A DNA stretch of 60,692 bases, the filler included, from Sluysia triapertura (Eukaryota): the NCBI GenBank assembly GCA_046118255.1. It is 4 parts of 4 records of this genome, joined end to end, with 100 filler letters (N's around TTAATTAATTAA, not from the genome) between each part and the next. Parts side by side here need not be neighbours in the genome. Positions count along the whole stretch, not along the records: positions 1 to 14,053 come from JBJNIA010007437.1; 3 more parts are not named here. The stretch is one strand, 5' to 3'. Of the stretch, positions 2,277-3,749 are shown piece by piece (position 1 is the first letter of the stretch; each line of letters begins with the position of its first letter). The translations under genes were made by a program, and so were the position numbers. The notes under the pieces are model-generated. The model did not search any database and was not told the origin of the DNA. It was given only the letters and a program-made list of their open reading frames with translations.

Positions 2277-2805
2277 AACATCACCTCTTTTAATTATAGA
2301 TAAACATTGTAAAGGATGTACCGTAAATAAATAAATGTGCTAAAATTTATTTCACTGTGATTACGAATAAGAAAAACCACAACAAGTGGATATTTAATTC
2401 CCAGATTATTATTCTGATTGGATAATTTTTCTTCACAATGCTTGAACATTATTTCCTTTGTTCTTTTGCAAAACACAAAAACTTAACACTGATTTCAAGT
2501 TACTGTGGATTTTCCATAAATAAATCAGAAAATTTATACAAAATGAACAATTTCCTTTTAGAATGCTCCAAGTACAATGTCTGAAATGTTCAGCAATCTT
2601 AAAAGTGATTGTAAAATTGAAAACATTGAATGAATCATTGAAGAATGAAAACAGTGATCCATTGTGCTTTTAAAAAGACGCTGAGAACTAATCAAATATG
2701 CGAAAGAGCGCATTAACTTTACAAAATTAAATGTTGGGGTACAGACCTAAAGTGCCATTTAGAATTATGATAGTATAATTGACTATAAAATAAAATTGTT
2801 AGACG

Positions 2806-2822
2806 GGGCTGATAGCTCAGTG
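2806..2822 (+). tRNA. 5' half of interrupted tRNA-Ala-like gene (copy A)
   Basis: GGGCTGA-TA-GCTCAGTG: acceptor 5' strand, A box and D stem; directly joined to retrotransposon coding sequence. Confidence 0.75.
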
Positions 2823-3677
2823 ATCACAACTGTTTCTTATAGACATCAAATCCCCCATTGATGATTAAGAAAACTTTCAAGCGGCCGAACATTTAATATT
2901 ACCAAGTATTCTGATATGAGACAAAACTCCAAGACCAACTCACATGTTCCGTCTCCCTAGACACATTCTTGGTTCTTGGAATCCAGAAAATGATTCTGTC
3001 CTTAAAAAGTTAGGTTTACGTAAAGCTGATATTACTGATATTACTAGTGTACCAAGCTATCCCTAGAATCTTTCTTTAATATCTATAAAGACCATTCTCT
3101 TCAATATCCCACTTAACTATTAATTCTCGTACCTTTCCTTTTTTGAGCTAAATAATATTATGTTTCTTTCAATTTCCCCTTTAATAAATTAATAAAATCC
3201 TTTGTATTTTCCAATATGACAACAACCATAATTATCTCTTCTTCTTTATGAATGTTTGTAAATCTTCCCATTTTTCCTTTTATGTAATGTATTGTTAAAT
3301 TATTCCAATATTTCTCTCTTTTCTTCTATGAATGCTTTTGTATCTTTTGTTAAATATAACCAAATAATCAAATAATACTTTGACTTCCTTTTTTCTCTGT
3401 GAATACGTACTTATTTCCATGAATGTTTGTATAACACTACATATTTTTCCTTTCCTATATAATTTAACTATGCTGCTCTTTACGAATGTATATAAATAAA
3501 TATTCTTGAACGTACTTCAATCAACAGAAGCATCATAGACAATAAATTTCTATTCTTTGACCAAATATTCTTATTTGCATTTATTTTGATCCCTTATATA
3601 TATTTATATAATTATTATTCACATTTATACCATACGTGTAAATACTTGTCACAATTTTAAAATACATGTAGTAATTT
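2823..3677 (+). mobile_element. 5'-truncated NeSL/Utopia-like RLE non-LTR retrotransposon (copy A)
   Basis: Frameshifted IDIKSPID..NFQAA..NITKYSDM..CSVSLDTF..GSWNPENDSVLKKLG..CTKLSLES..IYKDH, stop at 3114-3116, then a ~560-nt 3' UTR with degenerate CTCTT..TATGAATG repeats. Confidence 0.85.
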
Positions 3678-3749
3678 CATCGAACTGCACAGCTGTGAGG
3701 CAAGAGGTCCCGAGTTTGAATCCCGGCCAGTCCATTTAATGAAGTCTAA
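3678..3749 (+). tRNA. 3' half of tRNA-Ala-like gene (copy A) plus terminator and flank
   Basis: CATCGAACTG..AGGTC CCGAG TTTGAAT CCCGG CCAGTCC A, then TTT and the conserved flank ATGAAGTCTAA. Confidence 0.75.

What the first reader, a model, noticed from the sequence alone, without database searches (positions are those of the whole stretch)
2731..3749. Candidate tRNA-Ala-targeting site-specific non-LTR retrotransposon
Seen: three RLE retrotransposon copies with different 5' truncation points (2823-3677, 16059-16770, 54612-55951) all end at CATCGAACTG. That motif is followed by a tRNA variable loop, T arm, acceptor 3' strand, T run and AT(G/A)AAGTCTAA. Copies A and B start immediately after the tRNA 5' half GGGCTGATAGCTCA. 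Known: NeSL-clade RLE elements are site-specific (SL exons, U2 snRNA for Utopia, 28S rRNA for R5; as I recall tRNA-Arg/Glu for some Ciona and planarian families). They insert by target-primed reverse transcription, giving fixed 3' and variable 5' junctions. Inference: this family cleaves a tRNA-Ala-like gene between the D arm and the anticodon arm, a specificity I do not recall being described. Whether CATCGAACTG belongs to the element or the target is unresolved.
Basis: partly seen in the sequence, partly recalled or inferred. Interest (0 to 1): 0.92.

Follow-up and report, generated by a model that had tools for sequence, protein, structure and literature searches.

The report
tRNA-Ala-site-specific LINE nested in a SINE-like repeat
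A dead, 5'-truncated copy of a restriction-like-endonuclease (NeSL-type) LINE sits at a fixed position inside a dispersed tRNA-Ala-derived repeat. Dozens of other copies in the genome sit at the same position, so this is a real site-specific retrotransposon, but of a kind already known from planarians.

Summary
Window 2732-3752 is one ~164-bp tRNA-Ala-like dispersed repeat unit, split by an 851-bp 5'-truncated LINE fragment (2827-3677). Removing the fragment in silico restores a unit that aligns end to end with uninterrupted units at 86-87% identity.

Genome-wide:
- Every LINE 3' end examined joins the unit at the same base, before CATCGAACTG (tRNA position 24/25, between the D arm and the anticodon arm).
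- The LINE 5' ends are truncated at many different points. In 15 of 20 copies with a locatable 5' end, the unit's 5' part lies directly upstream.
- CATCGAACTG is therefore target sequence, not element sequence.

An uninterrupted relative in the same genome (ORF1 343 aa; ORF2 1105 aa) carries a Ulp1 protease domain, an RT domain and a CCHC zinc knuckle plus RLE. It abuts a canonical tRNA-Ala(AGC) gene at the same position. Nine empty tRNA-Ala sites exist in the genome.

- The window's target is a high-copy SINE-like tRNA-Ala derivative, not a working tRNA gene.
- tRNA-targeting NeSL-clade LINEs are already published (planarian LIN15_SM for tRNA-Arg and LIN25_SM for tRNA-Glu; NeSL-1_TV for tRNA-Pro). 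LIN15_SM inserts at the equivalent tRNA position.

Verdict: a new member of a known kind, with two modest twists, Ala specificity and expansion through a SINE-like target.

The parts
2732..2804 (+). Leader of the ~164-bp dispersed tRNA-Ala-derived unit. It has a TATA-like stretch about 25-30 nt before the tRNA-like part and ends in ...AAATTGTTAGAC.
   Evidence: blastn of an uninterrupted unit (L007:2561-2724) matches window 2732-2822. The same leader precedes the 5' part in many loci.
2805..2826 (+). 5' part of the tRNA-like module: an extra G, the acceptor 5' strand GGGCTGA, TA, the D stem GCTC and the D loop AGTGATCA. This is the upstream target flank of the LINE insertion.
   Evidence: Sequence read. 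The virtual excision aligns it with uninterrupted units.
2827..3104 (+). 5'-truncated LINE, C-terminal remnant of ORF2. It covers the end of the RLE domain, equivalent to residues ~1003-1102 of the intact relative, and is broken by stops and frameshifts.
   Evidence: Translation. tblastn with L056 ORF2 matches 2824-3045 and 3048-3104. blastn to a longer copy, L032.
3105..3677 (+). LINE 3' UTR, ending ...GTAGTAATTT with no poly(A).
   Evidence: 77-89% identical to the 3' UTRs of other copies. The common 3' end is seen.
3678..3734 (+). 3' part of the tRNA-like module, from position ~25 (CATCGAACTG) through the degenerate anticodon and variable region, the T arm, the acceptor 3' strand CCAGTCC and the discriminator A. 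This is the downstream target flank.
   Evidence: G3:U70 and A73 are read from the sequence.
3735..3752 (+). Trailer of the unit (TTTAATGAAGTCTAA...). GTCTAA(C) is the inverted complement of GTTAGAC just before the tRNA-like part.
   Evidence: Alignments of other copies end at window 3746-3752. The unit end is defined.
3786..3800 (-). Inverted exact 15-nt copy of the junction between the leader end and the tRNA 5' part (CGGGGCTGATAGCTC), lying in otherwise unique DNA. Origin unexplained.
   Evidence: The surrounding 3753-3900 is single-copy. L025 has a comparable inverted unit after its trailer.
10470..10562 (+). Second copy of the unit's leader plus tRNA 5' part. It stops at ...GGTCAGAGCAT, 2 nt past the LINE junction, and is followed by non-LINE DNA.
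   Evidence: The first ~170 nt downstream are single-copy and there is no LINE homology downstream.

Best explanation
Window 2732-3752 is one copy of a ~164-bp dispersed tRNA-Ala-derived (SINE-like) repeat. An old copy of a site-specific NeSL-type non-LTR retrotransposon inserted into it.

Inferred mechanism, by analogy with R2:
1. The element's ORF2 protein (Ulp1-like protease, RT, CCHC zinc knuckle, PD-(D/E)xK restriction-like endonuclease) recognises the tRNA-Ala-like DNA.
2. It nicks the bottom strand opposite tRNA positions 24/25, at GAG|CATCGAACTG, the D-stem to anticodon-stem boundary.
3. The freed 3'-OH primes reverse transcription of the element RNA from its 3' UTR end (...TTAAATT, no poly(A)).
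4. Reverse transcription usually aborts, which gives 5'-truncated copies.
5. Second-strand cleavage and joining are imprecise, which gives small target duplications or deletions upstream.

Shown: the fixed 3' junction, the variable 5' truncation, flanking by both target halves at independent loci, and the domain content of an ORF-intact relative.

Inferred: which strand is nicked, the order of steps, and that the RLE supplies the specificity.

The original target of the lineage is probably the canonical tRNA-Ala gene. An ORF-intact relative sits at the same position of a tRNA-Ala(AGC) gene. The thousand-copy families exploited the amplified tRNA-Ala-derived repeat as an abundant, harmless target.
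For: - Uninterrupted units exist and read ...GGTAGAGCATCGAACTGCGCAG....
- Rfam's tRNA model scores one uninterrupted unit 47.9 bits against a cut-off of 29.
- Virtual excision of window 2827-3677 restores a unit that is 86-87% identical end to end to three uninterrupted units, with only 2-3 nt missing at the joint.
- The target-side start of the 3' junction is unit position 95 in 12 of the 18 copies run, and at 92-96 in three more. The other three were off-target alignments. The same junction is seen in several LINE subfamilies with different 3' UTRs.
- The LINE 5' ends fall at many different points. The unit's leader or 5' part lies directly upstream in 15 of 20 copies whose 5' end could be located.
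- The target-side breakpoints all lie between the leader and about 15 nt past the nick. Some show TSD-like repeats of CATCGA... (L011, L048) and others show deletions (L002, L023, L045).
- Outer flanks differ between loci.
- Intact relative L056: Pfam RVT_1 at 1.8e-30 and Peptidase_C48 at 1.7e-07, with no APE domain. R2 structures align over the RT and over the CCHC plus RLE region, including CxxC...H...C, RHN, PD and D-V-K.
- The 3' UTR of L056 ends at ...CATTT|CGCTCGCTTAGCATGCGAG..., a tRNA-Ala(AGC) 3' part starting at position 25.
- Nine uninterrupted GGTAGAGC-GCTCGCTT(A/C/T)GCATGCGAGAGG sites exist in the genome, against 0 for the control pattern.
- A 33%-identical relative in an unrelated ENA contig abuts a tRNA-Val gene in its D loop, beside three intact tRNA-Val genes.
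- Published precedent: LIN15_SM joins tRNA-Arg at ...AGCGC|GTCGGACT..., the same structural position with a similar motif (PMC4640811).
Against: - Two copies (L007, L024) have 5' ends with no recognisable unit part upstream.
- Three copies (L010, L022, L048) have a nearly whole unit upstream of the LINE fragment, and one (L014) has an inverted leader.
- Six RLE-sampled loci show no tRNA part downstream. Four of them are broken before the LINE 3' end and two divergent subfamilies are unresolved.
- No full-length copy with both junctions was recovered.
- The 5' junction of the intact relative lies outside the DNA I could fetch. Its 3' UTR is single-copy, so its specificity rests on one insertion.
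- The tRNA 3' variant co-varies with the LINE subfamily, which a shared LINE/SINE tail would also predict.
- No biochemical evidence exists.
Confidence: 0.85

Rival explanations
1. Shared LINE/SINE 3' tail. The tRNA 3' part plus trailer belongs to the LINE itself, and the 164-bp unit is a SINE that borrowed this tail. Copies would then insert anywhere, and the 5' tRNA halves next to truncated LINEs would be occasional template-switch chimeras.
For: - The tRNA 3' part is attached to every LINE 3' end seen.
- Its sequence variant co-varies with the LINE subfamily.
- The trailer is often followed by (AAT)n, which looks like a retroposon tail.
Against: - 15 of 20 locatable LINE 5' ends abut the unit's leader or 5' part, which is far too many for rare chimeras.
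- The unit-side breakpoints cluster at or just upstream of the point where LINE-bearing and empty units start to agree, as expected for a nick site.
- Virtual excision restores a complete unit.
- A relative abuts a canonical tRNA-Ala gene at the same position, and another abuts a tRNA-Val gene inside a tRNA-Val cluster.
Confidence: 0.07
2. One or a few original insertions were later multiplied as passengers, either by retroposition of the composite SINE-plus-LINE or by segmental duplication. The element itself would not be site-specific.
For: - The host unit is a mobile high-copy repeat.
- L017 and the minus-strand copy in L057 start at nearly the same LINE position.
Against: - The truncation points differ in almost all copies, falling at reference positions 104, 887, 988, 1022, 1079, 1183, 1226, 1247, 1355, 1496, 1603 and ~1640-1680.
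- The target-side breakpoints also differ.
- Several LINE subfamilies with different 3' UTRs share the junction.
- Outer flanks are unrelated.
Confidence: 0.05
3. Internal-deletion derivatives. A long composite element begins with the unit's 5' part and ends with its 3' part, and the 'truncated' copies and the 164-bp unit are progressively larger internal deletions, as with MITEs.
For: - Both ends are retained in most copies.
- The unit has short inverted termini (TGTTRG...CYAACA) and an inverted repeat GTTAGAC/GTCTAAC.
Against: - The left breakpoints never extend into LINE 5' sequence.
- The right breakpoint is invariant to the base, which random deletions would not give.
- The coding content is that of an RLE non-LTR retrotransposon, whose copies are normally 5'-truncated by TPRT.
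- No consistent TSD of a DNA-transposon type was seen.
Confidence: 0.03

Closest known systems
LIN15_SM and LIN25_SM (NeSL clade, planarian Schmidtea mediterranea; Kojima & Jurka 2015, PMC4640811)
   Same: RLE-type LINEs that insert sequence-specifically into tRNA genes. In S6 Fig the LIN15_SM 3' end joins tRNA-Arg at ...AGCGC|GTCGGACT..., the D-stem to anticodon-stem boundary, with a motif close to the CATCGAACT seen here. Neither has a poly(A) tail.
   Different: The targets are tRNA-Arg and tRNA-Glu genes, not Ala. Their targets are ordinary tRNA genes, not a dispersed SINE-like derivative. No sequence comparison with LIN15_SM was possible because Repbase was not available.
NeSL-1 (Caenorhabditis, spliced-leader SL1 genes) and NeSL-1_TV (tRNA-Pro)
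   Same: Ulp1-like cysteine protease N-terminal to the RT, a C-terminal CCHC plus RLE, and site-specific insertion into a multicopy small-RNA gene. Caenorhabditis C48-bearing RT proteins are among the nearest named homologues, at 27% identity.
   Different: A different target. The proteins here fall in a separate, well-supported clade of unnamed sequences.
R2 (28S rRNA gene-specific, Bombyx and others)
   Same: RT plus CCHC plus RLE architecture. PDB 9nl2 matches at E 1.6e-48 over both regions. It shares the TPRT signature: an exact 3' junction, 5' truncation and small target deletions or duplications.
   Different: R2 targets 28S rDNA, has no Ulp1 protease and has a single ORF. R2 copy number is capped by the rDNA, whereas here the amplified target allows more than 1000 copies.
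LINEs that target other transposons (e.g. Tx1L into Tx1D, from memory) and Dada DNA transposons that target tRNA/snRNA genes (PMC3706591, PMC8869645)
   Same: They use a multicopy, dispensable repeat or small-RNA gene as a safe landing site.
   Different: Tx1L is an APE-type (L1-group) element. Dada elements are DNA transposons with a different mechanism.
Relative P0006 in ENA contig L062
   Same: C48 plus RT ORF2, 33% identical to the intact relative. Its 3' UTR end abuts a tRNA gene fragment.
   Different: It inserts in the D loop (about position 14/15) of tRNA-Val, inside a tRNA-Val gene cluster, in another organism.

Membership tests
RLE-type (R2-group) non-LTR retrotransposon | Reverse transcriptase domain | tested here: met
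   RVT_1 at 1.8e-30 in the ORF-intact relative L056 ORF2. RT-bearing degraded copies of related subfamilies were also found. The window copy is truncated downstream of the RT.
RLE-type (R2-group) non-LTR retrotransposon | C-terminal CCHC zinc knuckle plus PD-(D/E)xK restriction-like endonuclease, and no APE domain | tested here: met
   L056 residues 872-1082 align with the same region of R2 structures, including CxxC..H..C, RHN, PD and D-V-K. Pfam finds no Exo_endo_phos domain. The window keeps only the last ~100 residues, which are broken.
RLE-type (R2-group) non-LTR retrotransposon | TPRT signature: constant 3' junction, variable 5' truncation, no LTRs or TIRs | tested here: met
NeSL clade | [quoted passage not shown] | tested here: met
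   Peptidase_C48 at 1.7e-07 (31.7 bits, cut-off 20.7) at residues 47-159 of L056 ORF2.
NeSL clade | RT phylogeny places it with the NeSL-1, R5, LIN, Utopia and YURE reference families | not testable with these tools
   Repbase references were not available. In a tree of database homologues the protein lies in a clade of 13 mostly unnamed sequences (SH-aLRT 99). That clade joins the Caenorhabditis C48-RT plus arthropod group in an RLE assemblage (SH-aLRT 93, internal order unresolved), apart from APE LINEs.
tRNA-gene-specific LIN-type families | Insertion at one fixed position and in one orientation within a tRNA sequence | tested here: met
   The junction lies before CATCGAACTG (tRNA position 24/25), always in the sense orientation. 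The intact relative is at the same position of tRNA-Ala(AGC).
Functional tRNA-Ala gene (as the target) | Complete cloverleaf with an Ala anticodon | tested here: not met
   For the high-copy unit, the acceptor stem with G3:U70, A73, the D arm and the T arm are intact and Rfam scores 47.9 bits. The anticodon arm is degenerate. ARAGORN reports only 'tRNA-???' for one of the units and nothing for the others. The feature is met only for the target of the single intact relative, which has stem CTCGC/GCGAG and loop TTAGCAT.
SINE (as the nature of the target unit) | Short, dispersed, high-copy unit with defined ends and a tRNA-derived pol III promoter region | tested here: met
   At least 1172 first-look candidates. 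Of the 39 scored hits other than the query itself, 31 are 90-96% identical and start sharply at query position 80-88. Box A-like and box B-like motifs are read in the sequence.
SINE (as the nature of the target unit) | tRNA-derived head at the 5' end, LINE-related tail, TSDs | tested here: inconclusive
   The tRNA-like part lies at the 3' end, after a 70-nt leader. A TTTT run follows the discriminator inside the unit. (AAT)n often follows the trailer. No clear TSDs were seen in the few copies inspected.

The most novel reading that the evidence does not exclude
A site-specific RLE LINE lineage whose ancestral target is the tRNA-Ala gene escaped the usual copy-number ceiling of site-specific elements. 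It did so by colonising a tRNA-Ala-derived SINE-like repeat that keeps the recognition site. LINE and repeat subfamilies then co-evolved, reversing the usual relationship in which SINEs parasitise LINEs. An ORF-intact member is still present in a genuine tRNA-Ala gene.
Probability: 0.5. Interest if true: 0.55.

Novelty: new member of a known kind. Interest (0 to 1): 0.42.

Why it matters
Site-specific RLE LINEs such as R2 are models for target-primed reverse transcription and are being developed as safe-harbour gene-insertion tools. Each new, well-defined specificity adds a natural protein and target pair for comparison. Here that specificity is tRNA-Ala position 24/25, shared in position and motif with planarian LIN15_SM on tRNA-Arg.

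The case also shows how a site-specific element can reach more than a thousand copies: its target itself became a dispersed repeat. For genome annotation, it explains a frequent composite repeat in this very AT-rich genome (25% GC). That composite could otherwise be misread as split tRNA genes or as one large element.

Tried and rejected
- ARAGORN and Rfam on the window found nothing. This is uninformative because the unit is split.
I therefore fetched no more loci and used only match tables. As a result the region upstream of L056 (contig C227447, bases 1-2999) and the empty tRNA-Ala genes could not be read.
- No unit or tRNA 5' part was found in the 1.4 kb upstream of L056 ORF1.
- A guessed tRNA-Ala 5' pattern hit 24 places, none on the relevant contigs.
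- The minus-strand tRNA-like 15-mer at 3786-3800 is not part of a repeat family. Its surroundings are single-copy.
- The DNA immediately after the second unit fragment (10563-10740) is single-copy and has no LINE homology. Unrelated short repeats follow.
- The tree lacks named NeSL, R5, LIN, Utopia and YURE references, so it cannot assign the clade. The careful search did not finish and the quick tree is the one reported.
- The look-up of sequencing runs returned one coded DNA run and no RNA run.
- The organism could not be named. The nearest homologues are unnamed metagenome or Logan proteins.
- I built no consensus of the LINE. Natural copies (L032, L017, L042, L056) served as references.
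- Considered and rejected: a shared LINE/SINE tail, passenger amplification, and internal-deletion derivatives (see the rival explanations).
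Full report
**What is in the window.** One search shows the following layout.
- 2732-2804: a leader ending ...AAATTGTTAGAC.
- 2805-2822: GGGGCTGATAGCTCAGTG, which is the tRNA acceptor 5' strand, the D stem and the start of the D loop.
- Up to 3677: an inserted stretch.
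- 3678-3687: CATCGAACTG.
- 3688-3734: a degenerate anticodon and variable region, a T arm, the acceptor 3' strand CCAGTCC and the discriminator A.
- 3735-3749: TTTAATGAAGTCTAA.

The acceptor stem pairs GGGCTGA with CCAGTCC, the last pair (A7·C66) being a mismatch here. It has G3:U70 and A73, the alanine identity set (established knowledge). The inserted stretch is a dead LINE fragment. Window 2824-3104 matches residues 1003-1102 of an intact relative's ORF2, the end of the restriction-like endonuclease domain, with stops and frameshifts. The rest, to 3677, is 3' UTR shared with other copies at 77-89% identity. The window is 24.7% G+C and contains two N gaps.

**The target is itself a dispersed repeat.**
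- Uninterrupted versions of the tRNA-like module exist in several fetched loci, for example L007:2561-2724, L003:1366-1526 and two in L051.
- A genome search with one of them gave at least 1172 first-look candidates. Of the 39 scored hits other than the query itself, 31 are 90-96% identical, start sharply at query position 80-88, and end 160-195 bases further on.
- The unit is therefore about 164 bp. It has a 70-nt leader with a TATA-like stretch about 25-30 nt before the tRNA-like part, a 73-nt tRNA-like module, and a trailer TTTTATGAAGTCTAAC that is often followed by (AAT)n.
- Rfam's tRNA model scores the module 47.9 bits against a cut-off of 29. The acceptor, D and T arms are intact, but the anticodon arm is essentially unalignable.
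- ARAGORN calls one unit 'tRNA-???' and misses the others.
- It is a tRNA-Ala derivative, not a working tRNA gene.

**The LINE sits at one fixed site in this unit.**
- Among the 40 scored hits to window 3560-3760, all continue from the LINE 3' UTR into the tRNA 3' part. Most alignments stop at the unit's end.
- That query contained the tRNA part, so I also used an unbiased sample chosen by the RLE protein (at least 1373 candidates).
- In that sample, every copy that still has its 3' UTR end is followed by the tRNA 3' part (L036, L037, L042, L045, L048, L049, L052, L053, and also L059-L061). L047 has lost its 3' UTR end but still carries the unit's 3' end. This includes subfamilies whose 3' UTRs are not alike.
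- Six loci lack the tRNA part. Four are broken upstream of the LINE 3' end and two divergent subfamilies are unresolved.
- On the target side the junction is at unit position 95, directly before CATCGAACTG. Uninterrupted units read ...GAGCATCGAACTG....

**The 5' side behaves as expected for target-primed reverse transcription.**
- I mapped LINE homology with natural long copies and then inspected the upstream sequence.
- In 15 of 20 copies with a locatable 5' end, the unit's leader or 5' part lies directly upstream of a LINE truncated at a different internal point.
- The target-side breakpoints lie anywhere from the leader to about 15 nt past the nick. This means small duplications of CATCGA... 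in some copies (L011, L048) and deletions of a few to about 90 nt in others (L002, L020, L023, L028, L045).
- Exceptions: L010 and L022 have a nearly complete unit upstream, L014 has an inverted leader, and L007 and L024 have nothing recognisable upstream.
- For the window copy, deleting 2827-3677 in silico restores a unit that aligns end to end with three uninterrupted units at 86-87% identity. Only 2-3 nt are missing at the joint.
- Sequences outside the unit differ between loci, so these are independent loci.

**What the element is.**
- No intact copy of the window's own family was seen. The copies carry many stops.
- A related family in the same genome has one uninterrupted copy (L056, contig C227447). 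ORF1 is 343 aa with Cys/His motifs. ORF2 is 1105 aa with Pfam Peptidase_C48 (Ulp1-like) and RVT_1 and no APE domain.
- R2 protein structures align over its RT and over its C-terminal CCHC knuckle plus PD...D-V-K endonuclease.
- The nearest named homologues are Caenorhabditis C48-bearing RT proteins and arthropod proteins, at about 27% identity.
- In a tree it lies in a well-supported clade of unnamed sequences beside those groups and apart from APE LINEs (quick tree).
- This fits the NeSL clade by architecture. It could not be tested against Repbase references.

**The lineage targets tRNA-Ala proper.**
- The 3' UTR of L056 ends at ...CATTT|CGCTCGCTTAGCATGCGAGAGG..., followed by a T arm, AATCTCC, A and a T run. 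That is the 3' part of a canonical tRNA-Ala(AGC), starting at position 25.
- Its 3' UTR is single-copy. The tRNA part matches six other places in the genome.
- The uninterrupted sequence GGTAGAGC+GCTCGCTT(A/C/T)GCATGCGAGAGG occurs nine times, against zero for the control pattern. Those are empty sites.
- The junction is at the same tRNA position as in the SINE-like unit.
- A 33%-identical relative on an unrelated ENA contig (L062) ends against a tRNA-Val gene in its D loop, next to three intact tRNA-Val genes. tRNA targeting is therefore a trait of this wider clade.

**Comparison with the literature.**
- Kojima & Jurka 2015 (PMC4640811) report NeSL-1_TV as tRNA-Pro-specific. They report planarian LIN15_SM as tRNA-Arg-specific and LIN25_SM as tRNA-Glu-specific, and note that target specificity diversified in the platyhelminth LIN/R5 lineage.
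- Their S6 Fig shows LIN15_SM joined to tRNA-Arg at ...AGCGC|GTCGGACT.... This is the same structural position, with a motif resembling the CATCGAACT found here.
- Transposons are also listed there as known LINE targets.
- A full-text search found no non-LTR element described as tRNA-Ala-specific. Repbase itself could not be consulted.

**Mechanism (inferred).** By analogy with R2:
1. The ORF2 protein binds the tRNA-Ala-like DNA.
2. It nicks the bottom strand opposite positions 24/25.
3. It primes cDNA synthesis on the element's 3' UTR.
4. Incomplete synthesis gives the 5' truncations.
5. Imprecise second-strand cleavage gives the small duplications and deletions.

The junction statistics are shown. 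The strand, the order of steps and the role of the RLE are inferred.

**Rivals.**
- A shared LINE/SINE tail is contradicted by the frequency and clustering of the 5' halves and by the insertions into canonical tRNA genes.
- Passenger amplification is contradicted by the diversity of truncation points, junctions and subfamilies.
- Internal deletion of a composite element is contradicted by the invariant right breakpoint.

**Verdict.** Two corrections apply: the target here is a SINE-like derivative, and the class is already known. This is a new member of the tRNA-targeting NeSL-type LINEs, notable for its Ala specificity and for expanding through an amplified target.

Noticed in passing
window 10470-10562: A second copy of the unit's leader plus tRNA 5' part stops at ...GGTCAGAGCAT, 2 nt past the LINE junction. 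It is followed by DNA with no LINE homology, single-copy for the first ~170 nt. It may be a scar of an aborted or later deleted insertion, or a chance truncation.
   Followed up: partly
window 3786-3800 (minus strand); L025 (minus-oriented copy, after its trailer): An exact inverted 15-nt copy of CGGGGCTGATAGCTC lies about 35 nt after the unit's trailer, in otherwise single-copy DNA. In L025 a whole inverted leader plus 5' part follows the trailer at a similar distance. Tail-to-tail arrangements of units recur and are unexplained.
   Followed up: partly
L056 (G000:C227447:3000-9062), ORFs at 1384-2415 and 2422-5739: This is a relative with both ORFs uninterrupted (343 aa and 1105 aa; Ulp1 protease, RT, CCHC, RLE). 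Its 3' UTR is single-copy in the genome and abuts a canonical tRNA-Ala(AGC) 3' part.
   Followed up: partly
L062 (ENA contig k141_139814) 7040-8323: A homologous C48 plus RT element from another organism ends against a tRNA-Val gene in its D loop (...AAATTTTT|CGCGGTTATCAC...). Three intact tRNA-Val genes (AAC, CAC and TAC anticodons) follow within 1.3 kb.
   Followed up: partly
L007:2561-2724 and other uninterrupted units: The 164-bp unit is unusual for a SINE. The tRNA-like part is at the 3' end behind a 70-nt leader with a TATA-like stretch. A TTTT run follows the discriminator inside the unit. A 7-9-bp inverted repeat (TTGTTAGAC / GTCTAACAA) brackets the tRNA-like part. The termini read TGTTRG...CYAACA. 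(AAT)n often follows. How it is mobilised is unknown.
   Followed up: partly
L010 (about 908-1000), L022 and L048: In three loci a nearly complete unit, sometimes with the T arm deleted, precedes the LINE fragment, and the usual 3' part follows it. This could be a long target duplication or an insertion into tandem units.
   Followed up: no
L017:168 and L057 minus strand (about 946): Two copies at different loci start at almost the same LINE position (...AATATG(T/C)TAGAACT..., ORF2 residue ~580), right after the unit's 5' part. This may be a preferred stop point or a duplicated composite.
   Followed up: no
window 1-154, 6474-6568, 13871-14053: Other short repeats are shared with unrelated fetched loci (L051, L023, L005, L009). 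The window is 24.7% G+C and has N gaps at 4477-4606 and 7461-7615.
   Followed up: no
L005, L021 and L027, downstream of the trailer: Some older units share a further ~60-nt extension after GTCTAAC (ATTTGGTGAGCCCACATATC...). This suggests an older, longer subfamily of the unit.
   Followed up: no
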